NCBI GenBank assembly: GCA_002269645.1
Contig: NIVC01002456.1
Span: 1 to 64,000 of the forward strand
Length of the DNA: 64,000 nucleotides
Direction: 5' to 3'
DNA from: Macrostomum lignano
Taxonomy: Eukaryota
The stretch's first letter is position 1. Each line of letters begins with the position of its first letter. This document shows, piece by piece, positions 7,576-61,501 of this stretch. The notes below the pieces were generated by a model. The model was not told the DNA's origin. It made no database searches and saw only the letters and a program-made list of their open reading frames with translations. A program made the translations under genes and the position numbers.

Positions 7576-8082
7576 GTCTCATTTTTGGCAGCTTTTTAGT
7601 AAAATTGACGCTCTATGGATTATTTGTCGCGTTTTCCAATACTACTGTAACTGCTGAGTAGTACAGCAGACATTTTTTGCCACTTAGTTTGAGATGCGCA
7701 AAATTGGAATTCTCTATTGACAATTTCAATATAGACCGGGCCGTTCTCTACGCAGTAAAACAAATAATCAATTTAGCTTGTATAGTTGTAGAATCTCTGG
7801 TGTGTCTTTCCATGTAGTAAGATTTTACTAGCCTATATGAAATCTGCGTAAGCCCAGCGCGTTGTTCCATGACTAATCTCAACACAGTACTCGCACTGTG
7901 TTCCCTAACACTCCAGCTGTGTGGTCTGTGGCTGCTGGCTGCCACTGCACACTAATTAAATAACAAAATAAGATGCCCGCATGCATTGTACCCTCGGTTC
8001 AGGGCTTCAGCAGTTACTGAAGCGTGCACTCCGAACCTCATTGGTGAATCTGCTTTTAGATAGATAAAATCTATTTAGATAG

Positions 8083-8597
<515 letters not shown>

Positions 8598-9424
8598 TGA
8601 TGGTACACTGTGTACTTTGATACCCCCGTCTCTGAGCCGATGCCAGCCGACCAGATACTGGTTCAGCATCTGCCGCACTCTTGCTAGTGCGAATGCACTC
8701 ACAGTTCCTTTTGAGCTGTAATAGAGGAATAGTGCCCCATCTTTTTCTAGTCAGCTGTCTGTCACCTTGCGCCAGTTCTAGGAAACCGTCTGTTAGTCAT
8801 TCGTCACAACAGATAAACAGATTTGGAGGCTCACGAATAGGCTCAGACTCTCAACTGAATTAGTTTGGATGGTACTAACAGCAAGAAATGATTTAAGAAT
8901 TAAAATTGTTAATCAGATCTGGTACTATAAAAGTAAAATTACAAATATTAAAATTTAGTTGGCTTGAGTGGAATTGCTGAGATGCCAGAGCTCACTGAGG
9001 AGATTTTCCCTCAATGTCGGCTATTTAATCAAAAGTACAGCCTTGACCTTTCTGTGCCACTAACCAAAATCGAATTTCAGTTTCCATCTATCTCCCATCG
9101 CTTTCTCGCTTTTCAAGCCAACCTTTCTTCAATTCAATCATTATTTCAGTTGGTCTCTCTGAGTTCTTCCACTTGCTGTAATTTCTTCCAGAGGAGGGAG
9201 GGTAGGAGGCAGGACCCAACCAATGCAAGCAAAATTTCATTTCTTACTAGCAAAGAGGTGAACTGGGATTTTCGAAAATCCAATCCATTAAGGGGTGGGG
9301 TGGGAGACGTCTTGGTCCTTTTTCTGTCACTCTCAAAAAGACATTGCGTGTGCCGAATTATATGGAACTTAGAGATAGATTATCATTACAGAGAATCTGT
9401 CAGTAGATTGTCAGCATTATAGAG

Positions 9425-10310
9425 AGACTCTGTCAGTATATTGTCAGAGAGAGACTCTGTCAGTAGATTGTCAGAGAGACTCTGTCAGTAGATTGTCGGA
9501 GAGACTCTGTCAGTAGATTGTCATCATTAGAGAGAATCTGTCAGTATATTGTCAGCATTAGAGAGACCCTGTCAGTAGTAGATTGTCAGCATTAGAGAAT
9601 CTGTCAGTAGATTGTCAGCATTAGAGAATCTGTCAGTAGATTGTCAGCATTAGAGAGACTGTCAGTAGATTGTCAGCATTAGAGAGACTCTGTCAGTAGA
9701 TTGTCAGCATTAGAGAATCTGTCAGTAGATTGTCAGCATTAGAGAGACTGTCAGTAGATTTTCAGCATTAGAGAGACTGTCAGTAGATTGTCAGCATTAT
9801 AGAGAGACTCTGTCAGTAGATTGTCAGCATTAGAGAGACCCTGTCAGTAGATTGTCAGCATTAGAGACAATCTGTCAGTAGATTGTCAGCATTAGAGAAT
9901 CTGTCAGTATATTGTCAGCATTAGAGAGACTATGTCAGTAGATTGTCAGCATTAGAGAGACTCTGTCAGTAGATTGTCAGAGAGACTATGTCAGTAGATT
10001 GTCAGCATTAGAGAGAATCTGTCAGTAGATTGTCAGCATTAGAGAATCTGTCAGTATATTGTCAGCATTAGAGAGACTATGTCAGTAGATTGTCAGTATT
10101 AGAGAGACTCTGTCAGTAGATTGTCAGAGAGACTATGTCAGTAGATTGTCAGCATTAGAGAGACTCTGTCAGTAGATTGTCGGAGAGACTCTGTCAGTAG
10201 ATTGTCAGCATTAGAGAGACTCTGTCAGTAGATTGTCGGAGAGACTCTGTCAGTAGATTGTCGGAGAGACTATGTCAGTAGATTGTCAGAGAGACTCTGT
10301 CAGTAGATTA
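9425..10310. repeat. ~30-bp minisatellite
   Basis: Units like ctctgtcagtagattgtcagcattagagaga, with length variants. Confidence 0.95.
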
Positions 10311-10614
10311 TACGGCTGGCCTATCCAGCGAGTAACTCATGAAAATGAGTGACGCACCAATCAGCCAATGAGAGGCAACCAAGCAACGATTGGCTGCCCT
10401 TGTACCCAAATAAGTTGCAGTCTCAATGTCGAGTCGCTGAATTGCTAAAACAATCTCTGTAAAACAAGTTGGCGAACAATTTTTTTATTATAAATTTCTT
10501 TTGATCGGCAAGACAGTCGCTTAAATCCTTTGGTGAGCAATAGCGTTGTTTATAATAAAGTTTTAGTTTAATAATTACAAATAGTGTAAATGCACCCTGA
10601 CATCCTGCTTCTGA

Positions 10615-10775
10615 CACCTTTACGAGTATAACACCTCTGACATCCTCATAGTAGATTTCTGACATCCTCATAGTAGATTTCTGACATCCTCATAGTAGAG
10701 TTCTGACATCCTCGTAGTAGATTTCTGACATCCTCATAGTAGAGCCCTGACATTCTAAAGCTAGAGCTCTGACAT
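10615..10775. repeat. 22-bp minisatellite
   Basis: Copies of ctgacatcctcatagtagattt. Confidence 0.85.
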
Positions 10776-11389
10776 GCTCATAAAAGCTTATTAATCGACC
10801 AAACTCACATCAAAGAAGGCAAGCAAGAAAAAACAGAATATCGCAACTGAAAAGAGTGCATTAATTTATGCAATACTAACGGCTGAGATTGAGCGGGTGC
10901 GCATTCTAGAAAAAGAGAACTGCATCCCCACATTTTGCCATTTTTAATACGAGTATCGACTAAGAAGCAAAAGATAATCGATAGGCTAGCTTAGCTTTAC
11001 CGGGCTCTACTAATAGTCAAACAGACCCACCTGCTTCTAATTCCTTTCTGCCTACGCCCACTCAAAGTTAGGTAGAAAAGGAAAGAGTAGGAGGAGCCAA
11101 GGATGAAAAAGCAGTCCAACTATACGCTATAAAAACTTCTCGAAAGCTTGTACAAAATGGCCGGGTGGAGGCCGAAGTTGCGTGACTGGGTAATGGGTGC
11201 ATGTGGTTGCGCCAGTTCGGGGAACCTTTGAATAGAGATAGAGAATAGAGAAATTACTATATACTAATTTTCGTATCGATTTGGATATCTGAATCTGCAC
11301 TATTAAGCCTTGCTGGCTTCATTACTTCTGCTTGTTGCATCGGATTCACGTCTACCTGTAGGTCGCCACATTTGTTTGTTTGATGCTCA

Positions 11390-11990
<601 letters not shown>

Positions 11991-12120
11991 TCATCAAACA
12001 GAAATCTGATAAAAGACAAGCCAAGCTCTTTCTTCCTCGGACCATCCTTCTCGCTTTAATATTCCGTTTTTGTCTCCTTTTTGAGAAGCAACCTGTGCAT
12101 GCCAGTATAAGAGTACTTGG

Positions 12121-12651
12121 ATGCAACCGTCTCCACCGATGCCCCAAAAAATCCAGCTACCCAAAATTTCCAGCCCCTCTACAGCACGCATGAGGCGACA
12201 TCGGTCGAGCCAGCTCAAGCGGCTGATCTCTGTCTGCCACTGCCACCTGCTGCTGCTGCTGCTCCGCACCCCAACAACCGCAGCAAACAAGCCCCTAGAA
12301 GCAGCAACCAGCCCGACCCAATCGCCATCGATTAAGCAGTTAAAACTCGACGCCGGTAAGACAACGCAAAACTACCAACGGGAAGATTTAGAGGACGATG
12401 CTGGTCACAAAGACTTCATCTTTGTTGTCGGGTTCCTCTGCTTAGCCAGCTTCGGCTTCGTCGCTTTGGTGGCGTTCTGCACTCGCTACGCAGCCTCGAA
12501 GTCCGACCGGCAGGCGGAACGCTACATGAGAGACGTGGCCGAGAGACGAAGAATCAGCGCCGAGGCGACCGCGGCGGCGTCCGTCAACAAGCGCGACGCT
12601 CATGCCGTCGCCCTAGTGCCAAGGATCACTGTGGACGCGAGCTCCGTCTGA
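12121..12651 (+). CDS. Orphan putative single-pass membrane protein (176 aa from ATG 12121, or ~153 aa from ATG 12190)
   Basis: Non-repetitive, GC-rich intronless ORF. Hydrophobic leader [14 protein letters not shown], a TM-like segment [22 protein letters not shown] followed by basic residues, and a C-terminal V. No homology recognised. Confidence 0.5.
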
Positions 12652-12707
12652 GCTCCATACATGTGTACTCGGTTGCACCACTGACAATAAGTTAACTGCG
12701 TCTCTTG

Positions 12708-14165
12708 CTTACATGTAATTGTCTGTATGGCATATTGTCTGTCTTACATGTAATTGTCTGTATGGCATATTGTCTGTCTTACATGTAATTGTCTGTATGG
12801 CATATTGTCTGTCTTACATGTAATTGTCTGTATGGCATATTGTCTGTCTTACATGTAATTGTCTGTATGGCATATTGTCTGTCTTACATGTAATTGTCTG
12901 TATGGCATATTGTCTGTCTTACATGTAATTGTCTGTATGGCATATTGTCTGTCTTACATGTAATTGTCTGTATGGCATATTGTCTGTCTTACATGTAATT
13001 GTCTGTATGGCATATTGTCTGTCTTACATGTAATTGTCGGTATGGCATATTGTCTGTCTTACATGTAATTGTCTGTATGGCATATTGTCTGTCTTACATG
13101 TAATTGTCTGTATGGCATATTGTCTGTCTTACATGTAATTGTCTGTATGGCATATTGTCTGTCTTACATGTAATTGTCTGTATGGCATATTGTCTGTCTT
13201 ACATGTAATTGTCTGTATGGCATATTGTCTGCCTTACATGTAATTGTCTGTATGGCATATTGTCTGTCTTACATGTAATTGTCTGTATGGCATATTGTCT
13301 GTCTTACATGTAATTGTCTGTATGGCATATTGTCTGTCTTACATGTAATTGTCTGTATGGCATATTGTCTGTCTTACATGTAATTGTCTGTATGGCATAT
13401 TGTCTGTCTTACATGTAATTGTCTGTATGGCATATTGTCTGCCTTACATGTAATTGTCTGTATGGCATATTGTCTGTCTTACATGTAATAATCTGTATGG
13501 CAATATGCTATACAGGCAGACTGTATGGCATATTGTCTGCCTTACATGTAATTGTCTGTATGGCATATTGTCTGTCTTACATGTAATTGTCTGTATGGCA
13601 TATTGTCTGTCTTACATGTAATTGTCTGTATGGCATATTGTCTGTCTTACATGTAATTGTCTGTATGGCATATTGTCTGTCTTACATGTAATTGTCTGTA
13701 TGGCATATTGTCTGTCTTACATGTAATTGTCTGTATGGCATATTGTCTGTCTTACATGTAATTGTCGGTATGGCATATTGTCTGTCTTACATGTAATTGT
13801 CTGTATGGCATATTGTCTGTCTTACATGTAATTGTCTGTATGGCATATTGTCTGTCTTACATGTAATTGTCTGTATGGCATATTGTCTGTCTTACATGTA
13901 ATTGTCTGTATGGCATATTGTCTGTCTTACATGTAATTGTCTGTATGGCATATTGTCTGTCTTACATGTAATTGTCTGTATGGCATATTGTCTGTCTTAC
14001 ATGTAATTGTCTGTATGGCATATTGTCTGTCTTACATGTAATTGTCTGTATGGCATATTGTCTGTCTTACATGTAATTGTCGGTATGGCATATTGTCTGT
14101 CTTACATGTAATTGTCTGTATGGCATATTGTCTGTCTTACATGTAATTGTCTGTATGGCATATTG
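12708..14165. repeat. 35-bp minisatellite, ~41 highly homogeneous copies
   Basis: Unit gtctgtatggcatattgtctgtcttacatgtaatt. Confidence 0.98.
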
Positions 14166-17915: not shown

Positions 17916-18499
17916 ATTAAGCACACATAAGCACAAATTAGGAAGCAGTTTTCAACACGCCAACGCAGGCGAGAATGTCTTGTAAATTTTATACTATGCA
18001 TCACGCAGTTTAAAGTACAAGACGCACTTTGAAAAAAAATTAGTGGCAAAACAAAGCTGTATTCAATATGGTAACAAAACTTTAAACCATGATCCGTGCC
18101 GCACTGCACAGCTTCGAACTAGCATGCATAGAAGATGTGGAAAGCAGAAACGCAACTATAAAATAGTTTGAATAATTTATTTATATACGATACGACAAAT
18201 AATTTAGCGTAAACAACCTTCTCTAAAACAAAGCATTATTGTATTATTTATAATACAACGGAAACGCAAAACCATAAAAAGCGCATGCACAAATAAAATT
18301 GAAAAATATTCTTTTATTGGGAAAAAAATTATGTACTCAAAGGGCATTCAATCCTCTCTTTAAGTATTTGAGATAAGGGACACATTAAATCATCGCTTAG
18401 GCCTTCAGGTAATACGGATGTACGCATTGAAAAACCATTAGATTATTTTATGAGATTTGGAAATGATTACAAATGAACTAGGGAGGAATTAGGAAATGA

Positions 18500-20010
18500 T
18501 TATGGAGGGATTCGGAAGGGATTAAGGAAGGATGCGGAAGGGATTAAGGAAGGATTAGGAAGGGATTAAGGAAGGATCAGGAAGGGATTAAGGAAGGATT
18601 AGAAAGGGATTAAGGAGGAATCAGGAAGGGATTAAGGAGGGATTAGAAAGGGATTGAGGAGGGATTAGAAAGGGATTAAGGAGGAATCAGGAAGGGATTA
18701 AGGAGGGATTAGAAAGGGATTAAGGAGGAATCAGGAAGGGATTAAGGAGGGATTAGAAAGGGATTGAGGAGGGATTAGAAAGGGATTAAGGAGGAATCAG
18801 GAAGGGATTAAGGAGGGATTAGAAAGGGATTAAGGAGGAATCAGGAAGGGATTAAGGAGGGATTAGAAAGGGATTAAGGAGGGATTAGGAAGGGATTAAG
18901 GAAGGATCAGGAAGGGATTAAGGAAGGATTAGAAAGGGATTAAGGAGGAATCAGGAAGGGATTAAGGAGGGATTAGAAAGGGATTGAGGAGGGATTAGAA
19001 AGGGATTAAGGAGGAATCAGGAAGGGATTAAGGAGGGATTAGAAAGGGATTAAGGAGGAATCAGGAAGGGATTAAGGAGGGATTAGAAAGGGATTGAGGA
19101 GGGATTAGAAAGGGATTAAGGAGGAATCAGGAAGGGATTAAGGAGGGATTAGAAAGGGATTAAGGAGGAATCAGGAAGGGATTAAGGAGGGATTAGAAAG
19201 GGATTAAGGAGGGATTAGGAAGGGATTAAGGAAGGATCAGGAAGGGATTAAGGAAGGATTAGAAAGGGATTAAGGAGGAATCAGGAAGGGATTAAGGAGG
19301 GATTAGAAAGGGATTGAGGAGGGATTAGAAAGGGATTAAGGAGGAATCAGGAAGGGATTAAGGAGGGATTAGAAAGGGATTAAGGAGGAATCAGGAAGGG
19401 ATTAAGGAGGGATTAGAAAGGGATTGAGGAGGGATTAGAAAGGGATTAAGGAGGAATCAGGAAGGGATTAAGGAGGGATTAGAAAGGGATTAAGGAGGAA
19501 TCAGGAAGGGATTAAGGAGGGATTAGAAAGGGATTAAGGAGGGATTAGAAAGGGATTAAGGAGGGATTAGAAAGGGATTAAGGAGGAATCAGGAAGGGAT
19601 TAAGGAGGGATTCGGAAGGGATTAAGGAGGGATAAGAATAGGATTAAGGAGGGATCAGGAAGGGATTAAGGAGGGATTAGAAAGGGATTAAGGAGGGATT
19701 AGAAAGGGATTAAGGAGGAATCAGGAAGGTATTAAGGAGGGATTCGGAAGGGATTAAGGAGGGATAAGAATAGGATTAAGGAGGGATCAGGAAGGGATTA
19801 AGGAGGGATTAGAAAGGGATTAAGGAGGAATCAGGAAGGTATTAAGGAGGGATTCGGAAGGGATTAAGGAGGGATAAGAATAGGATTAAGGAGGGATCAG
19901 GAAGGGATTAAGGAGGGATTAGAAAGGGATTAAGGAGGAATCAGGAAGGGATCAAGGAGGGATTAGAAAGGGATTAAGGAGGGATTTGGAAAGGATTAAG
20001 GAGGGATAAG
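18500..20010. repeat. Purine-rich 22-bp minisatellite with a 330-bp higher-order repeat
   Basis: Units like gggattaaggagggattagaaa. The variant gaaggatcag occurs at 18571, 18901 and 19231. Confidence 0.93.
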
Positions 20011-21099
20011 GAAGATATTCGGGAGACTACTAAAGAATTAGGAAGCGCTTAAATACTCGGTCAGCAAGAAGCAGACTACATGGATGCAAACACAGTTAAA
20101 GCAAAACTCATAACCACTAATAATTGCATTATAGCATGCAGTTCATATTAACAAACTACACAAAATCGTTTGTTTTTCAACTTTGAAAGCGGTACAGAGA
20201 TTCGACAGCTAAATTAATTACAACTTTTGGGACAAACCTTTGCAATAATTAAAACCGAAACATATTACAGTTTACAGATCAAACATACAGTTTTGGATCT
20301 TTTAGTGAAATATTATTAGTGCAATAAAACAACTATTATTACTAAGATATAAGACTAGATATTGCAGTTAAAAAGATATAAGATCAGTAAAGTAAACAGT
20401 TATTGCTCAGTAAATCAAGCTTTAATGATTTATTTATAACAAATAGTTAAGAGATAAAAGCAGAGGCGTGCATTCAGAATTCTCTTTGCCGTATGTGCCT
20501 GTATACAAATCGAAATATCTATTTTTGCCTTACTAACAGAAAAAGATTGCCATTAAAAATGAGGTTGCAAACACACAATATTGCAATTTTAATTATAAAG
20601 AGTTTTACTATAGATATAATTGAGGATCAGGTAGAAAAAAGTGACAAAGAGGTCAGGAAAAAAGACTCCTGAAAATTCGAAATAAAATATTTGAGATTAT
20701 TTGTTAATTGTTACAATTTTTAAACCTTGTAAATAAAAAATAATATTAATAAAATAATAATTTGGTCATTGCATACGGTTTACACAAGCTAATTAATCTA
20801 AGAATCTGCTGATTAAAACTGATCATTCTGTTGTCAAAGATATCCAATTCGACCAGGAAAGGTCAAACAAAAGAAAAAATCAATTAGCAATCCAATTTTC
20901 TACAGTAATTGTTAAAAGAAAACATTGTTGCCATTAGTTCGGCTTTCTAAGAATTTCTCCAAGCTTTTTTAAATATTGGCAGATTTTTTTTCTGGAAACC
21001 GTTGACGCGTTTCTTAGAAATTTTTACACCAGTTTTTTATTTTGAGCCTCTTTATAAAACCGTGTTTGTTTCTTAGAAACAGCCTTGGAAACTAACAGG

Positions 21100-51589: not shown

Positions 51590-53445
51590 AGATCTGGGAG
51601 GCTGGCCTAAGCAACTGACACTGTGGGAGGCTGGCCCAAGCAACTGACACTGTGGGAGGCTGGCCTAAGCAACTGACACTGTGGGAGGCTGGCCCAAGCA
51701 ACTGACACTGTGGGAGGCTGGCCTAAGCAACTGACACTGTGGGAGGCTGGCCCAGCAACTGACACTGTGGGAGGCTGGCCCAGCAACTGACACTGTGGGA
51801 GGCTGGCCCAGCAACTGACACTGTGGGAGGCTGGCCCAGCAACTGACACTGTGGGAGGCTGGCCCAGCAACTGAGGATCTGGGAGGCTGACCCAGCAACT
51901 GACACTGTGGGAGGCTGGCCCAGCAACTGACACTGTGGGAGGCTGGCCCAGCAACTGACACTGTGGGAGGCTGGCCCAAGCAACTGACACTGTGGGAGGC
52001 TGGCCCAGCAACTGACACTGTGGGAGGCTGGCCCAGCAACTGACACTGTGGGAGGCTGGCCCAAGCAACTGACACTGTGGGAGGCTGGCCTAAGCAACTG
52101 ACACTGTGGGAGGCTGGCCCAGCAACTGACACTGTGGGAGGCTGGCCCAGCAACTGACACTGTGGGAGGCTGGCCCAGCAACTGACACTGTGGGAGGCTG
52201 GCCCAGCAACTGACACTGTGGGAGGCTGGCCCAGCAACTGACACTGTGGGAGGCTGGCCCAGCAACTGACACTGTGGGAGGCTGGCCCAGCAACTGACAC
52301 TGTGGGAGGCTGGCCCAGCAACTGACACTGTGGGAGGCTGGCCCAGCAACTGAGGATCTGGGAGGCTGACCCAGCAACTGACACTGTGGGAGGCTGGCCC
52401 AGCAACTGACACTGTGGGAGGCTGGCCCAGCAACTGACACTGTGGGAGGCTGGCCCAAGCAACTGACACTGTGGGAGGCTGGCCCAGCAACTGACACTGT
52501 GGGAGGCTGGCCCAGCAACTGACACTGTGGGAGGCTGGCCCAGCAACTGAGGATCTGGGAGGCTGACCCAGCAACTGACACTCTGGGAGGCTGGCCCTGC
52601 AACTGACACTGTGGGAGGCTGGCCCTGCAACTGACACTGTGGGAGGCTGACCCAGCAACTGAGGATCTGGGAGGCTGGCCCAGCAACTGACACTGTGGGA
52701 GGCTGATCCAGCAACTGAGGATCTGGGAGGCTGGCCTAAGCAACTGACACTGTGGGAGGCTGGCCCAGCAACTGACACTGTGGGAGGCTGGCCCAGCAAC
52801 TGACACTGTGGGAGGCTGGCCCAGCAACTGACACTGTGGGAGGCTGGCCCAGCAACTGACACTGTGGGAGGCTGGCCCAGCAACTGAGGATCTGGGAGGC
52901 TGACCCAGCAACTGACACTGTGGGAGGCTGGCCCAGCAACTGACACTGTGGGAGGCTGGCCCAGCAACTGACACTGTGGGAGGCTGGCCCAAGCAACTGA
53001 CACTGTGGGAGGCTGGCCCAGCAACTGACACTGTGGGAGGCTGGCCCAGCAACTGACACTGTGGGAGGCTGGCCCAGCAACTGAGGATCTGGGAGGCTGA
53101 CCCAGCAACTGACACTCTGGGAGGCTGGCCCAGCAACTGACACTCTGGGAGGCTGGCCCAGCAACTGACACTGTGGGAGGCTGGCCCAGCAACTGAGGAT
53201 CTGGGAGGCTGACCCAGCAACTGACACTCTGGGAGGCTGGCCCAGCAACTGACACTCTGGGAGGCTGGCCCTGCAACTGACACTGTGGGAGGCTGGCCCT
53301 GCAACTGACACTGTGGGAGGCTGACCCAGCAACTGAGGATCTGGGAGGCTGGCCCAGCAACTGACACTGTGGGAGGCTGACCCAGCAACTGAGGATCTGG
53401 GAGGCTGGCTGGCCCAGCAACTGAGGATCTGGGAGGCTGATCTGG
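51590..53445. repeat. 28/29-bp minisatellite with variant blocks
   Basis: Unit gcaactgacactgtgggaggctggccca, about 65 copies. It is the source of the spurious 582/432/349-aa ORFs. Confidence 0.98.
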
Positions 53446-54441: not shown

Positions 54442-57400
54442 CTAGCAACGCTGCTCAGCCCGAAGCAGCACCCGCCTAGACCGAGCGTCCAGCCAGTCGG
54501 CCACCCGGCCAGCAGCGGCCAGCCCGCTGACGCAGGCGCCAGTCAGGCTGTGCGGAAACTCCTTCGAAGCGGCTTCGCTGGCGAAGAACAACGGGCCGGC
54601 ATCGCCGTCGCCGTCGCCGCCGCTAGAGCAGCCGACGTCGGCTGAAAGTGCGTCGGCGAATTCGGCGTCGCCAGTAGGCGACCATCGACCAGCGGCCGGG
54701 TAGGCGGCGGACCAGCTGCTCAGCGACGAATCGACGGGCGGTTCGGCAGATTCGCCGAATATTACGGCGAGTCGACGAGTGGCCTCTCTGGTGGCGTAGC
54801 CGAGCGGATCAGCCTGAGCTGCCAGATGTTCAACAGCCTTGCCGCAGAAGATCGCCAACAGCGGAAAGGCCGACGACGTTGATGGCGAATTGTCGCCATC
54901 GACCGGGGACGGATCGACGAACAGGTGGCAGATGCCGCGACTTGTCGACGACTCCGGCAGAGCGGCAAAACATCGACTCGGCAGCCAGAATCGACGTCGG
55001 AATCGAAGCCTCAGCGTCGACAAACGGCAGCAGCCGTGAGCGTCGGCCGCTCGCAGTTTAGAACTGGGCAGCGGCGGCTCGAACTCCGGACCGTCATTAT
55101 CGTCACCGGTCAGAAGACCCGACGGCGCTAGCGGCAGCGTCAACAGACAGCAGGCGGCGCGGATCCGACGCCCGTCGGTTAGCGACACTTCGACACCGGT
55201 GTCTGGCGAAGTCGAGGAGGCCGCCGGACGTCGACAGATCCGGGCGACGGCGGAACCGCGCAGCAGCGGAACCGTCCGCGAGCCGGCAGCCAGCCAGTCG
55301 GCCAGGTCGGCCAGAGTGTCGACTCCGACAATCGCTGAATTGTCGCTTAGTTGCGGCAGAATTTTGTCGCGCTCGAACGGCAACGTCGAGGCGGCGGATA
55401 CTAGATCGAGTGGGGCGCCTAATCTGTACTCTAAACTGGCCAGGTAGAAATTTAACAATCTGGCGCCTTGCTCCGAACTGGCGGTCATCTCGTCTAACAG
55501 ACTCTGCTCGTCGATTTGCGTCGAAACTGATACGTCATCACTTTCGATTGGTGCCGACACAAATCCGGTTGGATTCGAGCTATTTTTGGTAAAATTGGAT
55601 TTCTTTCCAGTGGGATTTGATTTACTTCCGGTAGAATTGGGTTCACTTCCGGTAGGATTTGCTTCACTTCCGGTAGGATTGGCTTCACTTCCGGTAGGAT
55701 GGGCTTCACTTCCGGTAGGATTGGCTTCACTTACGGTAGGATTGGCTTCACTTCCGGTAGGATTGGCTTCACTTCCGGTAGGATTGGCTTCACTTCCGGT
55801 AGGATTGGCTTCACTTCCGGTAGGATTGGGTTCATTCCCGGCAGGAATAGATTTACTTCCGGTTGCATCATAATTTGCAGCATCGGATTCGACAAAGAAG
55901 CTAACAGCTTCACTTCCGGTTGTCCGAGCCTTTCGCCTAGCTGACGCGTAGACTCGCTTAGCGGACGCCGCGGCGAGTGCCTCAGTAACGACGTCGACAG
56001 CTTGACAGACCACGTCGGACTCCGCCGCGATCCGACCGCCGTCGGGCCAGTCGAACAGGTCCACGTTCAGCAACGGATTATCCTCCAGACTACGAACACC
56101 GCTGTGGCCGATGCCCCGCTGCAGCGCCATTAGACACAGCGGGTTATTCGACACGCTATCAACGACAGCAATGTCGGGTAGACGAAGTCGCCGACGACTA
56201 TTTCCTTTGTCGTTATCCCTTTCGTTGTTGTTGGTCGATTCAATCAGAACGACGCGCCGGCCAAAGCTGACCAGCTGCCGAGCCGCCACCAGTCCCGCAA
56301 TGTCGTCGCCGACAATAACGACATCAGTGACACTACCGTCGTCGCAATCGCCGTCGTCGCCGTCAGCAGCATCGGAAGCGACAGGTCGGATGCCGAAATT
56401 AATAAGGCCCTGACGTTCTAATCGACGAATAATAGCCGGCAAAATGGCCGAACAGATTCGAATCCTGGCCAGGCCTCTACATAGGATTAACGATTCAGAG
56501 CGTCGACTGCCAGCAATAGTTGGCCAATCGGCTGGTGTCCGAGACGATGATTGAGCCAGCGTCGAGTGCCAGATGGCCCAGGCGGCTAGCAGAGTATTGC
56601 GCACTGCCAGGTACAGCTGCGGCTGGTTGCGCAGCTCCAACTGGCCAGCTGGGTAGGCGGCGGCCAGTTCGTCGGGATCGACCTGGTCGGGCCGGACCGA
56701 CAAAGCCGAGCAACTCGAAGAAGCGGCCGAGGACTGGCCGAAAGAGAACAGGCCGCTGGCGAACGGGTGGAGCTGGGACGGCGAGTCTAAAGGGCGGCGG
56801 GGAGGGGAAGAAGCGATCTGGTTGTGGACTGAACTCGGACACCGCTGATGAGGTTTAGAGTCTGGGCCTCCTCATCCACTTCCTCTATCTTCCAGCCTCC
56901 CTTAAATCTCCCATCCCTACATCTACCTCCCATCCCTACATCTACCTCACCATCCCTACATCTACCTCACCTTCCCTACATCAACCTCACCATCCCTACA
57001 TCTACCTCACCATCCCTACATCTATCTCACCATCCCTACAACTACCTCACCATCCCTACATCTACCTCCCCATTCCTAAATCTACCTCTATTCCTAAATC
57101 CGCCTCCCGATCCCTACATCCGCCTCCCGATCCCTACATCCGCCTCTCAATCCCTACATCCGCCTCCCGATCCCTACATCCGCCTCTCGATCCCTACATC
57201 CGCCTCCCGATCCCTACATCCGCCTCCCGATCCCTACATCCGCCTCCCGATCCCTACATCCGCCTCTCGATCCCTACATCCGCCTCCCGATCCCTACATC
57301 CGCCTCTCGATCCCTACATCTGCCTCCCGAAGTAGGAGGGCTGTTGGAAAACGCCTTCGGCGACACCGTCCCACCACTGGCGCTGTGAAGCAATGTTGCC

Positions 57401-58253
57401 CATTCCGCTGACTACTGAGCACATACAAACTCGCCAATACTGTATGCAAGCACGCACTCATGCACACGCTCACAGAGTGTGCAGCGGCCCTGACAAGCTC
57501 CAAAATGAATTTGGCCAGGAATCGAACCAGGGGACGCATTTTACCGCTAAGCCCTACCAATCAGCTGATCACCGGGCAGAGGCGCCAGACCAACGCTTAA
57601 AGGCCTGCAGCCGTTCAACTTGGAGTCGAACAGCAGCAGCCTTCTACAGCAGTTGTCCTGCAGCAGCACAGGAGCAGCCAGGCTGGACAGGAAATCAGGA
57701 TCCGACGCGGCCCAAGCCACGCCCGGGTGTTCGGGTTCGTCGCAATTACTGCATCGAAACTCTAACAAACGCCTTGGCAACAAGTTATAATAGTTATCGC
57801 TATTACAATCCGAGCCAGTGTCCAATTGTCTCCACCGGCCGCAGTCTCGACAAGAGGCCCAGTAGGGCAGTGCGGCGTTAGCCAGCAGTTCCCTGGGGCT
57901 GGGCTGGCGGCACTCCGCACGCAACCAGGCCGATCTGAGCTGAGCAACCCAACTAGGTGCCCATTCGTTGGATAACCGGCCTCGATAGCACAGCTCAAAA
58001 CAGGCGTTGCAATAGTGCTCCCACCTGCTCAGGTGGTACCAACGCGACGTTTTAGAATTAGATTCTGTTGCTATAGCGACGCAACGAGACGATAGGCGGG
58101 CGAAACAGACCGGTTGAGACTCGCCGCAACCAGATTTTGTGCAGCCTTCGAGAGCACCGCGGCTGCCGACGAAGTCAGAGCTATCGGGTTCGCGTTTGCG
58201 TTTCAGAAGACAGATATTTGGTCTGTGTTTCTTAGAAACAGTGGGCTGCGATC
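54442..58253 (-). CDS. KDM1B: KDM1B/LSD2 homologue (C4H2C2 zinc finger, zf-CW, SWIRM, amine-oxidase-like domain), 5'-incomplete model, predicted catalytically impaired
   Basis: Exon 58253-57573 encodes CTKSGC..PVCFA..RC..SRWYHLS..EHYCNACF and LPYWASCRDCGRWRQL..CDEPE, the LSD2-specific zinc fingers. Exon 56786-54442 encodes LSVRPD..YLAVRNTLLAAW..RGLARIRIC..GLINFG (SWIRM) and the oxidase domain. The phase-1 intron has a strong pyrimidine tract. The first exon has no in-frame ATG, so the start exon is unresolved. Confidence 0.9.
55590..55830 (-). repeat. In-frame 21-bp coding repeat (NPTGSEA)n within KDM1B
   Basis: About 11 units of ggattggcttcacttccggta (plus-strand reading), frame preserved. 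Confidence 0.95.
56890..57330. repeat. 18-bp intronic minisatellite
   Basis: catccctacatctacctc and gatccctacatccgcctc units. Confidence 0.93.
57345..57560 (-). mobile_element. tRNA-derived SINE (most complete copy of a family with ~5 copies in the window)
   Basis: Head TGGTAGGGCTTAGCGGTAA...GGTTCGATTCC (A/B-box-like). Body gtcagggccgctgcacactctgtgagcg...gtgctcag..agcggaatggg is shared with 44350-44440+46480-46555, ~40880-40950, ~35810-35925 and ~28385-28420. Confidence 0.7.
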
Positions 58254-58374
58254 CTAGATAAGAGATGAGCAGCCGGTCTGGGTGAGATTAGAAAATGAGC
58301 AGCCCGTCTGGATGAGATGAGACAGTGCAGGTGAGAATGTGAGCAGGAAATCTAGGTTAGATTAGAAGCGAGCA

Positions 58375-58745
58375 GCCAGTCTATGTGCGAATAGATGTGA
58401 GCAGGAAATCTAGGTGAGACTAGATGTGAACAGGAAATTTAGGTGAGACTAGATGTGAGCAGGAAATCTAGGTGAGAATAGATGTGAGCAGGAAATCTAG
58501 GTGAGAATAGATGTGAGCAGAAAATCTAGGTGAGAATAGACGTGAGCGGGAAATCTAGCTGAGAATAGACGTGAGCGGGAAATCTAGGTGAGAATAGACG
58601 TGAGCGGGAAATCTAGGTGAGAATAGACGTGAGCGGGAAATCTAGGTGAGAATAGACGTGAGCGGGAAATCTAGGTGAGAATAGACGTGAGCGGGAAATC
58701 TAGGTGAGAATAGACGTGAGCGGGAAATCTAGGTGAGAGTAGATG
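58375..58745. repeat. 29-bp minisatellite upstream of the first identified KDM1B exon
   Basis: Unit agacgtgagcgggaaatctaggtgagaat. Confidence 0.93.
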
Positions 58746-59609
58746 TGCACGAGCAGGGAGTCTACGCTCATAGATACGAATGTGAGTTCGCGATCATTCA
58801 AAAAGGACAGAGTGAGTATAGATAGCTAGATTTTATAAGACTTCACAGCTTGATGTGAATTAGGTTTTACGAATTTTAAATCTGCAAGTGCCTACACGGA
58901 CATAGGAGACAAGATTTGAAAAATCTGAGTTTTCGTTCGCAAGAGTTGTATGTACGGCCAAGTTGCCCTAAGATTTCTAGATAAATATATATGAATATTA
59001 TAAATATTTTTGAACATTTTCAGACGATAATAAAATTTTTGTTTTCTATAAATATAAATAAAAAAAGATATTGCTAATAATTTGTTAAATTCGATTTTGA
59101 TAACGCTAACCAAAAAGTTGTTGTTTCGAGGGCTAAAAGCGTATTTTATATTTATTCAATATTTCAATAGCAACAGCTGGATAAAGGAAACAAAATAATT
59201 AACAATGGAAAGAATAAACCGGTAATGCTTGGAAAACTAATAAACAGATGTATTAAATCGACGGCCTCTTTAACCTGCTTAAGACGGGACAGAAACTAAT
59301 GCGCTAATTAATTATTAAAAGAGTAAGTGTAGATAAATATTTTTGCCTTAAAAATCTATCTGCAATGGCGCAACACTAGCGAGAAAAATTATGGAATTCA
59401 TACGAAACACGGCCTAAGCGAGTGCACAAATTTGTGGCTATTTATCTCTAGATGCGGTGTAACTACTACTGCAAGTACGGTATTATGGCTTTCTAATAGA
59501 AATTGGTCGAACGAAGCTATGTTATAAGAACGACACCTATTAATAGTATTAACTACTTAATTGAATAGTGCAATTCAAGTCCGCAATGGATGCTTCGCAA
59601 AAGCATTTC

Positions 59610-61501
<1,892 letters not shown>

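What the first reader, a model, noticed from the sequence alone, without database searches (positions are those of the whole stretch)
54442..58253. LSD2/KDM1B homologue that looks like a pseudo-demethylase
Seen: the LSD2 reader modules (C4H2C2 zinc finger, zf-CW, SWIRM) are well conserved and the 781-codon exon is fully open, but the oxidase chemistry is degraded at several independent sites. The Rossmann GxGxxG reads GDDIAG (56293-56310). The downstream GGR motif is replaced by NNNERDNDKGNSRRR. The residue aligning with catalytic Lys661 (LSD1 GNLNKVVL; LSD2 GIIEKIAL) is Thr (CCRLSTLRLRF, 55015-55017). The FAGE motif reads FASE and the GSYS aromatic-cage segment is not recognisable. Established: these motifs bind FAD and support catalysis in LSD1/LSD2. 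Inference: this is a selected, catalytically dead chromatin reader or scaffold rather than a pseudogene.
Basis: partly seen in the sequence, partly recalled or inferred. Interest (0 to 1): 0.78.

Follow-up and report, generated by a model that had tools for sequence, protein, structure and literature searches.

The report
Flatworm LSD2 without its catalytic chemistry
This Macrostomum lignano gene is the flatworm version of the histone demethylase LSD2/KDM1B: it keeps the zinc fingers, SWIRM domain and overall fold but has lost the FAD-binding loop and the catalytic lysine, the same losses occur in flukes and tapeworms, and the gene is under purifying selection, so flatworms probably use LSD2 as a non-enzymatic chromatin protein.

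Summary
The window is Macrostomum lignano contig NIVC01002456.1. The minus-strand gene (exons 58251-57558 and 56786-54442) is BOX15_Mlig012995g1, a clear LSD2/KDM1B orthologue. Its best PDB sequence and fold matches are human LSD2, and it sits inside the LSD2 clade in 200/200 NJ bootstraps. The zinc-finger ligands, zf-CW and SWIRM are about as conserved as in a snail LSD2. The amine-oxidase domain is not: GxGxxG reads GDDIAG, GGR is gone, and the catalytic Lys is Thr.

All three M. lignano copies share these states; FASE is private to this copy. It is not a pseudogene: dN/dS between paralogues is 0.27 (p = 1e-8) and all indels are in frame.

The main addition is phylogenetic. Trematode, cestode and monogenean "KDM1B" proteins form one clade with it. 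They share the loss of the Lys (Thr in most, Ala or Ser in two cestodes), mostly Asp at the second P-loop Gly, and new conserved motifs. Inactivation therefore appears ancestral to rhabditophoran flatworms, and M. lignano is the least decayed form.

The schistosome papers I read list these proteins as putative demethylases. Loss of activity is inferred, not assayed. Whether M. lignano has a second, intact LSD2 could not be tested.

The parts
57558..58251 (-). Exon A: N-terminal basic stretch, C4H2C2 zinc finger, zf-CW and start of the linker. An AG sits at 58255-58254, so the exon could start at 58253. The 5' end and start codon are unresolved.
   Evidence: Open frame. Junction identical to NCBI model PAA57689.1. 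dN/dS 0.11 against the paralogue.
58000..58143 (-). C4H2C2 zinc finger (CTKSGC...C...C ... YH..EH.C..C). All eight ligand positions are present.
   Evidence: Alignment to canonical LSD2. 56% identity to a vertebrate LSD2. Ligand identities (human C53/C58/C65/C73/H84/H90/C92/C95) are from my own knowledge.
57730..57861 (-). CW-type zinc finger (LPYWASCRDCGRWRQL ... FRCSNCDEPE). Four Cys are present.
   Evidence: Pfam zf-CW 18.1 bits, below the 27.5 cut-off. Alignment.
56787..57557 (-). Intron (GT...AG) containing a 20-bp x 21 minisatellite at 56908-57330.
   Evidence: Intron length is 771 nt here and 959 nt in paralogue g2.
54442..56786 (-). Exon B: linker, SWIRM and a degenerate amine-oxidase-like domain. 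The stop codon is at 54442-54444.
   Evidence: AF2 model pTM 0.74, best fold match human LSD2.
56386..56706 (-). SWIRM domain (ALSVRPDQ ... LYLAVRN ... GLINFG), with a 14-residue insertion.
   Evidence: Aligned to the SWIRM of 4gu0. Helical in the AF2 model. 43% identity to vertebrate LSD2. Pfam 12.8 bits, sub-threshold.
56293..56310 (-). Degenerate dinucleotide-binding loop GDDIAG (canonical GxGxxG); the second Gly is Asp.
   Evidence: Identical codons in all three copies. The beta-alpha-beta around it is still predicted at pLDDT 86-91.
56188..56232 (-). NNNERDNDKGNSRRR, replacing the (R/K)DRxGGR FAD-pyrophosphate motif. The Glu at the end of beta-2 (LIE) is kept.
   Evidence: pLDDT below 50 in the model.
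55605..55863 (-). In-frame 21-nt coding minisatellite (PTGSEAN x about 12). It lies within a 110-residue low-complexity insert (55543-55872), in the loop where LSD1 carries its Tower.
   Evidence: Copy number differs between paralogues by 21 and 42 nt.
55015..55017 (-). Thr codon (ACG) at the position of the catalytic Lys (LSD1 and LSD2 K661).
   Evidence: It lies in a predicted beta-strand, LSTLRLRF.
54913..54939 (-). RGICHLFVD, a flatworm-specific motif (RG[IF]CHxFxD) that is invariant from Macrostomum to trematodes. Canonical LSD2 has RGLFxxFYD here.
   Evidence: (invariant columns R809 C812 H813 F815 D817 of P0001).
54670..54690 (-). GRWSPTG, the remnant of the G(S/A)YS aromatic-cage loop, with Tyr replaced by Trp.
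54568..54588 (-). FFASEAA, the C-terminal FAD motif FAGE with a copy-specific Gly-to-Ser change. It is followed by PHSLTGA (canonical PxTVxGA).

Best explanation
The gene is the M. lignano orthologue of LSD2/KDM1B and has become a pseudoenzyme.

**What is retained.** The protein keeps the LSD2 architecture: C4H2C2 zinc finger, zf-CW, SWIRM and a two-lobed amine-oxidase fold.

**What is lost.** It can most likely no longer bind FAD, because an Asp occupies the second Gly of the Rossmann P-loop and the GGR pyrophosphate motif is gone. It also lacks the Lys that supports flavin chemistry. I therefore expect that it does not oxidatively demethylate H3K4.

**How it probably works (inferred).** It is kept by purifying selection because the non-catalytic functions of LSD2 persist. 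These would be binding of chromatin and partner proteins through the zinc fingers, SWIRM and the remodelled former substrate/cofactor face. In effect it acts as a scaffold, reader or recruiter.

**Timing.** The inactivation is old. It was probably already present in the common ancestor of Macrostomorpha and Neodermata. M. lignano preserves the least decayed AO domain.

**Shown here:** homology, motif states, fold prediction, selection and phylogenetic distribution. **Inferred:** loss of FAD binding and activity, and the scaffold/reader role.
For: **Orthology**
- Human LSD2 is the best PDB sequence hit (6.5e-27).
- It is also the best fold hit for an AF2 model with pTM 0.74 (E 2.7e-27, TM 0.57-0.60).
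- In the NJ tree the LSD2 clade (flatworm proteins included) and the Macrostomum + Neodermata clade within it are each recovered in 200/200 bootstraps.

**Motif losses**
- GDDIAG, loss of GGR, Lys to Thr and GA...NNP to DIAVV...NNP.
- The codons are identical in three genomic copies, so this is not a sequencing error.
- The Pfam Amino_oxidase score falls in steps: 271 bits in a vertebrate, 209 in Argonauta and Tropilaelaps, 85 in M. lignano (C-terminal half only; NAD_binding_8 sub-threshold) and 16 or less in Neodermata.

**Selection**
- dN/dS is 0.27 (CI 0.17-0.42, p = 1.4e-8), and below 0.4 in every domain.
- All indels are in frame.
- The GenBank annotation of this assembly was built from a genome-guided RNA-seq transcriptome (PMC5730564).

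**Domain-specific relaxation**
- The reader modules are as conserved as in a mollusc LSD2. AO identity is roughly halved.

**Shared derived states across flatworms**
- The Lys position is Thr in M. lignano, all seven trematodes, two of four cestodes and the monogenean. It is Ala or Ser in the other two cestodes.
- The second P-loop Gly is Asp in M. lignano and in 9 of 11 neodermatans, counted back without gaps from the RQ[LIV] helix anchor.
- New invariant motifs are shared: RLxT, RG[IF]CHxFxD and YLASxEYxLxxPL.

**Precedent**
- Catalysis-independent scaffolding by LSD1, and by S. pombe Lsd1/2, is documented (PMC9803847; PMC7226997).
Against: - No biochemical test was possible. FAD binding by a non-canonical loop cannot be excluded from sequence alone.
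- M. lignano still has the beta-2 Glu, FAGE (in two of three copies), the TGA helix motif and an aromatic residue at the cage Tyr position. A confident Rossmann beta-alpha-beta is still predicted.
- LSD1 K661A is reported to keep about 20% activity on nucleosomes, so Lys to Thr alone is not proof of inactivity.
- dN/dS rests on only 81 substitutions between intragenomic paralogues of a hidden polyploid.
- The start codon is unresolved: there is no in-frame ATG in the first 450 codons.
- The NJ clade could be inflated by long-branch attraction, and alignment of neodermatan AO regions is uncertain away from the anchored motifs.
- The scaffold/reader role is not tested by anything here.
Confidence: 0.75

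Rival explanations
1. The protein is still a working, if unusual, flavin amine oxidase. FAD would be held mainly by the retained C-terminal motifs and the beta-2 Glu, and another residue would substitute for the Lys.
For: The LIE Glu, FFAGE in two of three copies, PHSLTGA and GRWS are retained, and the Rossmann beta-alpha-beta is predicted with confidence. LSD1 K661A is reported to keep about 20% nucleosome activity. The AO domain is still under purifying selection (dN/dS 0.35-0.37).
Against: Two acidic residues sit in the loop that must approach the FAD pyrophosphate, and the second Gly is replaced. GGR and the GA of GAxxxxGxxNNP are lost. The segment CCRLSTLRLRFRRRFW contains no Lys. In neodermatan orthologues the whole FAD lobe is unrecognisable (Pfam 16 bits or less), yet the gene is kept, so retention does not require catalysis. 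One copy tolerates FAGE to FASE.
Confidence: 0.12
2. It is a decaying pseudogene, or an unconstrained duplicate, that merely happens to remain open.
For: The catalytic motifs are degraded. An expanding minisatellite lies inside the coding region. No in-frame ATG is present. All three NCBI models are 5'-partial.
Against: The frame is open for 1012 codons in three copies. dN/dS is 0.27, significantly below 1. All indels are multiples of three. The annotation is transcript-based. The zinc ligands are intact. Orthologues are conserved across the Macrostomorpha-Neodermata split, with invariant new motifs. The missing ATG has an ordinary possible explanation in SL trans-splicing, because the M. lignano SL ends in ATG.
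Confidence: 0.03
3. The degenerate copy is a flatworm-specific paralogue that coexists with an intact, catalytically active LSD2. This would be sub-functionalisation rather than loss of the enzyme from the lineage.
For: M. lignano is a hidden polyploid with many duplicated genes. I could not search its proteome by taxon. S. mansoni is reported to have two LSD2-like genes.
Against: In S. mansoni, BLASTp with human KDM1B recovered only Smp_160810 and Smp_162940, at E = 1e-6 and 1e-8. A canonical LSD2 would score far better (PMC6288008). Among the hits of the exhaustive HMMER search that could be named, none was a flatworm canonical LSD2. The three M. lignano copies are syntenic (GAPDH upstream, an LDL-receptor-like gene downstream) and all are degenerate.
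Confidence: 0.1

Closest known systems
Human LSD2/KDM1B/AOF1 (PDB 4GU0, 4FWE, 4HSU and others)
   Same: The domain order is the same: C4H2C2 zinc finger, zf-CW, linker, SWIRM, then an AO domain without a Tower coiled coil. It is the best sequence and fold match. All zinc ligands are present, and the window protein falls in the same clade of the tree.
   Different: GxGxxG reads GDDIAG, GGR is lost, K661 is Thr and the cage Tyr is Trp. There is a 110-residue low-complexity insert at the Tower position and a 14-residue insert in SWIRM. AO identity is only 28-37%.
Neodermatan 'lysine-specific histone demethylase 1B' proteins. These include the S. mansoni putative SmLSD2s Smp_162940 and Smp_160810 of the literature, whose sequences I did not examine. 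The sequences examined here are other Schistosoma orthologues, including S. mansoni Smp_169550 (P0020), plus Clonorchis, Fasciola, Paragonimus, Hymenolepis, Spirometra and Protopolystoma proteins.
   Same: They form one clade with the window protein (200/200). The catalytic Lys is lost in all of them (Thr in most). Asp occupies the second P-loop Gly in 9 of 11. They share the new motifs RLxT, RG[IF]CHxFxD and YLASxEYxLxxPL. The zinc fingers and SWIRM are kept.
   Different: The neodermatan AO domain has decayed much further. There is no Pfam Amino_oxidase hit above cut-off, and FAGE, TGA and the third P-loop Gly are lost, with large insertions. The papers I read list these proteins as putative demethylases or drug targets and do not remark on the missing catalytic residues.
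Catalysis-independent (scaffolding) function of LSD1/KDM1A, for example the K661A mutant, and of S. pombe Lsd1/Lsd2
   Same: This is an AO-family chromatin protein that acts without demethylation, through partner and substrate binding (PMC9803847; PMC7226997).
   Different: Those are active enzymes carrying engineered mutations, or enzymes with dual roles. Here the loss is natural, affects several sites, is fixed, and extends across all the flatworm classes sampled.
JARID2, the catalytically inactive JmjC-family member used as a PRC2 cofactor (from my own knowledge, not tested here)
   Same: It is a conceptual precedent: a histone-demethylase fold kept as a non-enzymatic chromatin regulator.
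   Different: It belongs to an unrelated fold and cofactor class (Fe/2-oxoglutarate JmjC), and it coexists with active paralogues.
LSD2 of Argonauta hians (P0042) and Tropilaelaps mercedesae (P0058)
   Same: The catalytic Lys is replaced (Thr and Gln respectively). Argonauta also lacks GGR.
   Different: GxGxxG and FAGE are intact in both (Tropilaelaps reads FLAGE), and the AO domain scores about 209 bits. They lie outside the flatworm clade, so these are independent events.

Membership tests
LSD2/KDM1B orthologue group (membership by descent and architecture) | N-terminal C4H2C2 zinc finger with eight ligands | tested here: met
   C-x4-C-x6-C-x7-C ... H-x5-H-x-C-x2-C aligns column for column with canonical LSD2. 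56% identity to a vertebrate LSD2. Ligand numbering is from my own knowledge.
LSD2/KDM1B orthologue group (membership by descent and architecture) | CW-type zinc finger following the first finger | tested here: met
   LPYWxxCxxCxxWRQL ... C..C, with four Cys, aligned to canonical LSD2. Pfam zf-CW scores only 18.1 bits against a 27.5 cut-off.
LSD2/KDM1B orthologue group (membership by descent and architecture) | SWIRM domain between the CW finger and the oxidase domain | tested here: met
   Aligned to the SWIRM of 4gu0 by phmmer. Helical bundle in the AF2 model at pLDDT 80-90. 43% identity to the vertebrate protein. Pfam is sub-threshold at 12.8 bits.
LSD2/KDM1B orthologue group (membership by descent and architecture) | Amine-oxidase fold without the LSD1 Tower coiled coil | tested here: met
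   Pfam Amino_oxidase 85.3 bits against a 19.8 cut-off. Best fold matches are LSD2 chains at TM 0.57-0.60 and rmsd about 6 A, against about 17-19 A for LSD1. The Tower loop holds a disordered PTGSEAN repeat instead.
LSD2/KDM1B orthologue group (membership by descent and architecture) | Phylogenetic placement within LSD2 rather than LSD1/LDL | tested here: met
   NJ tree on 645 columns. LSD2 including the flatworm clade is monophyletic in 200/200 bootstraps. No ML tree was possible.
FAD-dependent amine-oxidase histone demethylases (functional class) | GxGxxG dinucleotide-binding loop | tested here: not met
   GDDIAG in all three copies. The loop is GxGxxG in 21 of 23 reference LSD-family sequences; the other two read GAGISS and GSGMSG.
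FAD-dependent amine-oxidase histone demethylases (functional class) | Beta-2 acidic residue followed by the (R/K)DRxGGR motif | tested here: not met
   The Glu is kept (VVLIE). GGR is replaced by NNNERDNDKGNSRRR.
FAD-dependent amine-oxidase histone demethylases (functional class) | Catalytic Lys (K661 of LSD1 and LSD2) near flavin N5 | tested here: not met
   Thr (ACG, 55015-55017). There is no Lys in the aligned segment CCRLSTLRLRFRRRFW.
FAD-dependent amine-oxidase histone demethylases (functional class) | C-terminal FAD motif FAGE...TVxGA and the aromatic-cage Tyr | tested here: inconclusive
   The window copy reads FASE and the paralogues read FAGE. PHSLTGA is retained and Tyr is replaced by Trp.
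FAD-dependent amine-oxidase histone demethylases (functional class) | Bound FAD and H3K4me1/2 demethylase activity | not testable with these tools
   Needs recombinant protein, flavin spectroscopy and demethylation assays.
Pseudoenzyme maintained by selection | Intact ORF with dN/dS significantly below 1 and conservation across deep splits | tested here: met
   dN/dS 0.27, p = 1.4e-8. In-frame indels. Orthologues in Trematoda, Cestoda and Monogenea.
Pseudoenzyme maintained by selection | Expression of the locus | tested here: inconclusive
   The evidence is indirect. The GenBank models of Mlig_3_7 derive from an RNA-seq/StringTie transcriptome (PMC5730564), and my splice junction matches that model. 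No reads were examined.

The most novel reading that the evidence does not exclude
The ancestor of rhabditophoran flatworms converted its only LSD2 into a pseudoenzyme. The former cofactor and substrate face was not just left to decay. It was rebuilt into a new, strongly conserved surface (RLxT strand, RG[F/I]CHxFxD, (E/A)R.D..LP and YLASxEYxLxxPL) that binds a different ligand or partner. On this reading, flukes, tapeworms and Macrostomum rely on LSD1 alone for flavin-dependent histone demethylation, and the 'SmLSD2' drug targets are not enzymes at all.
Probability: 0.35. Interest if true: 0.75.

Novelty: new variant of a known kind. Interest (0 to 1): 0.62.

Why it matters
**Evolution of chromatin enzymes.** LSD2/KDM1B is treated as a conserved metazoan H3K4me1/2 demethylase. 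A clade spanning several flatworm classes keeps the protein while discarding its cofactor site. That would be a natural, long-running separation-of-function experiment, and it argues that the non-catalytic role of LSD2 (zinc fingers, SWIRM, nucleosome or partner binding) is sufficient for retention.

**Drug discovery.** Schistosome and other helminth epigenetic target lists count two 'SmLSD2' proteins as demethylases and give them druggability scores (PMC6288008, PMC7077139). If they lack an FAD pocket, tranylcypromine-type inhibitors cannot act on them. LSD1 would then be the only flavin demethylase target.

**A tractable model.** M. lignano supports transgenesis (PMC5730564) and carries the least-decayed version. 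That makes it a good system for finding out what a dead LSD2 does.

**Generality.** Independent Lys losses in a cephalopod and a mite suggest that LSD2 is repeatedly prone to this transition.

Tried and rejected
1. **Pseudogene.** Rejected on dN/dS, in-frame indels, three intact copies and conservation across flatworm classes.
2. **Sequencing or assembly error at the motifs.** Rejected. The codons are identical in three separate contigs.
3. **Link to loss of DNA methylation.** I considered that LSD2 inactivation tracked loss of DNMT1/3 in flatworms. PMC11292947 states that M. lignano retains DNMT1 and DNMT3 and has low 5mC. The two events are therefore not coupled in this species, and I dropped the idea.
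4. **Third homologous-protein search.** I used a trimmed flatworm alignment (A1). It returned only 3 hits and did not even recover the trematodes, so it was uninformative. The exhaustive HMMER search replaced it.
5. **First AF2 run.** With 13 sequences it gave pLDDT 49.7 and pTM 0.47, too poor to use. A 36-sequence alignment gave pTM 0.74.
This is out of frame: ATG|GATCGC... stops after 16 codons. Two other AG sites are in frame (see Noticed in passing).
7. **Organism of the intact Logan LSD2s P0002 and P0024.** I could not identify it. P0024 is intronless on a 15-kb contig of SRR10746997.
8. **Planarian, polyclad or catenulid orthologues.** None of the hits that could be named was from these groups. 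Five flatworm-type fragments from Logan carry no name. The inactivation cannot yet be placed below Rhabditophora.
9. **Literature.** In the held library I found no paper stating that flatworm LSD2 proteins lack catalytic residues. Absence from this library is not proof that nobody has noted it.

Full report
**What the window is.** A homology search with the spliced protein found a 92%-identical protein from Macrostomum lignano. Cluster look-up and contig retrieval showed three copies in assembly GCA_002269645.1 (Mlig_3_7). These are BOX15_Mlig012995g1 (PAA57689.1), Mlig019979g1 and Mlig019979g2. The first is identical to my translation, and its contig NIVC01002456.1 (64,663 bp) is the window. 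In all three loci a GAPDH gene lies directly upstream and an LDL-receptor-like gene lies downstream.

**Gene model.**
- On the minus strand an open segment runs from 58287 to 57550, and a second, 809-codon open segment from 56871 to 54445.
- A donor G|GTAGGG at 57558/57557 joins an acceptor cccttTAG|AC at 56787/56786 in phase 1. The junction reads ...GDQLI-D-SPSQLHPF....
- The NCBI models have exactly this junction. According to Wudarski et al. 2017 (PMC5730564) they come from a genome-guided RNA-seq transcriptome.
- The intron carries a 20-bp minisatellite.
- The 5' end is unresolved. All three NCBI models are 5'-partial, and the reading frame has no ATG in its first 450 codons.

**Checking the observation.**
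- phmmer against PDB puts human LSD2 first (6.5e-27). It aligns VVIVGDDIAGLVAARQL with VIIIGAGPAGLAAARQL, ESTNNNERDNDKGNSRRR with EAKDRIGGRVWDD, and CCRLSTLRLRF with GAGIIEKIALQF.
- In a 36-sequence alignment the P-loop is GxGxxG in 21 of 23 reference LSD2/LSD1/LDL sequences (the other two read GAGISS and GSGMSG), GGR is present in 20 of 23, and the Lys in 21 of 23.
- All eight C4H2C2 ligands and four CW cysteines are present.
- Two details need correction. FASE is a private GGC-to-AGC change of this copy, while the other two copies read FAGE. The GSYS loop is recognisable as GRWS, with Trp for the cage Tyr.

**Is decay specific to the catalytic domain?** Yes.
- Against a vertebrate LSD2, M. 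lignano scores 56% (zf), 40% (CW) and 43% (SWIRM). That is essentially the same as the snail Biomphalaria (60/48/40%).
- In the three AO segments it drops to 37/28/28% against 56/50/46%.
- Pfam tells the same story as a gradient. Amino_oxidase scores 271 bits in a vertebrate and 209 bits in Argonauta and Tropilaelaps. It scores 85 bits in M. lignano, matching only profile positions 190-442, with the Rossmann models sub-threshold. In trematodes and cestodes it scores 16 bits or less.

**Fold.**
- With a 36-sequence alignment AF2 gave pTM 0.74 and mean pLDDT 69.6 for exon B.
- The best PDB matches are all human LSD2 chains (E about 3e-27, TM 0.57-0.60, rmsd about 6 A), followed by LSD1.
- The Rossmann beta1-loop-alphaA-beta2 (VTDVVIV-GDD-IAGLVAARQLVS...VVLI) is still predicted at pLDDT 86-91.
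- Several of the low-confidence stretches map onto former contact loops: the GGR replacement (188-200), the loop aligned to the substrate-binding WDxxxxF segment (469-481), and the GRWS loop (694-705).
- The 110-residue PTGSEAN insert is also low-confidence.
- This fits a retained scaffold with remodelled or floppy former active-site loops.

**Selection.**
- I codon-aligned the three copies. The window copy and g1 differ at 6 sites.
- The window copy and g2 differ by 52 synonymous and 45 non-synonymous changes. Three indels (21, 42 and 6 nt) are all in frame.
- Nei-Gojobori dN/dS is 0.29 overall and 0.27 without the repeat (bootstrap CI 0.17-0.42). A binomial test against neutrality gives p = 1.4e-8.
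- By region it is 0.11 (zinc-finger exon), 0.24 (linker + SWIRM), 0.35 (AO N-terminal lobe) and 0.37 (AO C-terminal part).
- The AO domain is thus more relaxed than the reader modules but clearly still constrained. This is a small sample of substitutions between paralogues in a hidden polyploid, so the regional values are rough.

**The wider picture.**
- A search seeded with a Dicrocoelium hit recovered 'lysine-specific histone demethylase 1B' or hypothetical proteins of Clonorchis, Opisthorchis, Paragonimus, Fasciola, Schistosoma and Heterobilharzia. None carries a precomputed Pfam domain.
- An exhaustive HMMER search with a Macrostomum + trematode profile added further proteins. Cluster look-up named them as Calicophoron, the cestodes Spirometra, Mesocestoides, Hymenolepis and Hydatigera, and the monogenean Protopolystoma.
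- In an NJ tree (645 columns) Macrostomum + Neodermata is monophyletic in 200/200 bootstraps and lies inside the LSD2 clade, which is itself recovered in 200/200. The internal branching mirrors the species tree.
- The grouping does not rest only on long branches, because there are discrete shared derived characters:
  1. The Lys position, anchored nine residues upstream of the conserved [FW]W, is Thr in M. lignano, all trematodes, Spirometra, Hymenolepis and Protopolystoma. It is Ala in Mesocestoides and Ser in Hydatigera.
  2. Counted back without gaps from the RQ[LIV] helix anchor, the second Gly of GxGxxG is Asp in M. lignano and in 9 of 11 neodermatans.
  3. New motifs are invariant from Macrostomum to trematodes: RLxTxxL, RG[IF]CHxFxD (canonical RGLFxxFYD) and YLASxEYxLxxPL.
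- The most economical reading is that the enzyme was already inactivated in the common ancestor of Macrostomorpha and Neodermata, which is a basal split within Rhabditophora (phylogeny from my own knowledge). The AO domain then decayed much further in Neodermata.

**Is there an intact LSD2 alongside?**
- For S. mansoni, Padalino et al. 2018 (PMC6288008) report that BLASTp with human KDM1B recovers only Smp_160810 and Smp_162940, at E = 1e-6 and 1e-8. There is therefore no canonical LSD2 in that genome.
- For M. lignano I could not run a taxon-restricted search. None of the canonical hits that I could name was a flatworm protein. This remains the main open check.

**Mechanism.**
- Established knowledge of Rossmann-type FAD sites says that the second Gly of GxGxxG allows the pyrophosphate to approach the helix N-terminus, and that the GGR arginine contacts it. 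Asp-Asp in that loop together with loss of GGR should abolish FAD binding.
- The Lys is needed for flavin chemistry. However, LSD1 K661A is reported to keep about 20% activity on nucleosomes (PMC9803847), so I do not lean on that residue alone.
- I therefore consider the protein a pseudo-demethylase (about 0.75).
- What it does instead is inferred. The best-conserved parts are the zinc fingers and SWIRM. In addition, the block around the former active site is invariant across flatworms rather than random. Both point to chromatin or partner binding, not mere structural ballast.
- Catalysis-independent roles of LSD1 and of fission-yeast Lsd1/2 are documented precedents.
- A link to loss of DNA methylation was considered and dropped, because M. 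lignano is reported to retain DNMT1/3 (PMC11292947).

**Novelty.**
- The family and its domains are well known, and pseudoenzymes among chromatin modifiers are known in principle.
- What I did not find in the papers searched is any statement that flatworm LSD2 proteins lack the FAD and catalytic residues. The schistosome papers I read list them as putative histone demethylases and rate their druggability.
- I file this as a new variant of a known kind, with moderate to good interest.

**Limits.**
- No biochemistry and no read-level expression data were available.
- The tree is NJ only, and dN/dS comes from one paralogue pair.
- Alignment of the neodermatan AO region is reliable only around the anchored motifs.
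- The start codon is unknown.

Noticed in passing
window 58190-58260 (- strand): The LSD2-like reading frame has no in-frame ATG in its first 450 codons, and all three NCBI models are 5'-partial. The M. lignano spliced leader ends in ...TTGCATG (PMC8629364). Two AG sites, tgtttctaAG|AAACAC (exon would start at 58230) and cgcAG|CCCACT (58245), are in frame, so trans-splicing there would donate the AUG. GAPDH ends only about 1.35 kb upstream on the same strand, so an operon-like arrangement is possible.
   Followed up: partly
window 55543-55872 (- strand): A 21-nt coding minisatellite (PTGSEAN heptads, about 12 copies) sits in the AO-domain loop where LSD1 carries its Tower. Copy number differs between the paralogues by 21 and 42 nt, always in frame. 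AF2 predicts the region as disordered.
   Followed up: partly
window 1-54400 and 56908-57330, 58339-58747: The window is packed with 4-bp microsatellites and minisatellite arrays with units of 11-76 bp, mostly 20-45 bp. The window-wide scan alone (score 400 or more) returned about 30 distinct arrays in 1-51 kb. Examples are 28 bp x 65 at 51595-53439 and 44 bp x 35 at 18482-20014, the latter with GC skew about 0.7. The long ORFs at 51.6-53.5 kb, and most others in the window, are translation artefacts of these repeats. Arrays also flank the gene on both sides and fill its intron.
   Followed up: partly
window 59610-61498 (- strand): A three-exon GAPDH gene (Gp_dh_N and Gp_dh_C domains) lies directly upstream of the LSD2-like gene. 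The same order (GAPDH, LSD2-like, LDL-receptor-like gene) is found at all three M. lignano loci.
   Followed up: partly
P0042 (Argonauta hians GAB1611014.1) and P0058 (Tropilaelaps mercedesae OQR75056.1): These are otherwise canonical LSD2 proteins, with intact GxGxxG and an Amino_oxidase score of about 209 bits. The catalytic Lys is replaced by Thr (and GGR by ETQ) in the cephalopod and by Gln in the mite. Both lie outside the flatworm clade, so LSD2 may have lost this residue repeatedly. A Gordionus (nematomorph) protein, P0050, keeps the zinc fingers and SWIRM but shows no recognisable oxidase motifs.
   Followed up: partly
L003 (NIVC01002008.1) 11409-13753 versus protein P0007: The genomic exon B of copy Mlig019979g1 aligns gap-free to the window's exon B (2345 nt, 6 mismatches). 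The deposited protein is 20 residues shorter within the PTGSEAN repeat. The annotation, or the transcript it was built from, has collapsed repeat units.
   Followed up: no
L004/L005 (Logan SRR10746997 and SRR10746996), 8001-11156: An intact, intronless 1051-aa LSD2 (P0024) with a long N-terminal extension lies on a compact 15-kb contig next to a NudC-like gene. The source organism is unknown. It was the best canonical hit to the flatworm profile in the word-indexed search.
   Followed up: no
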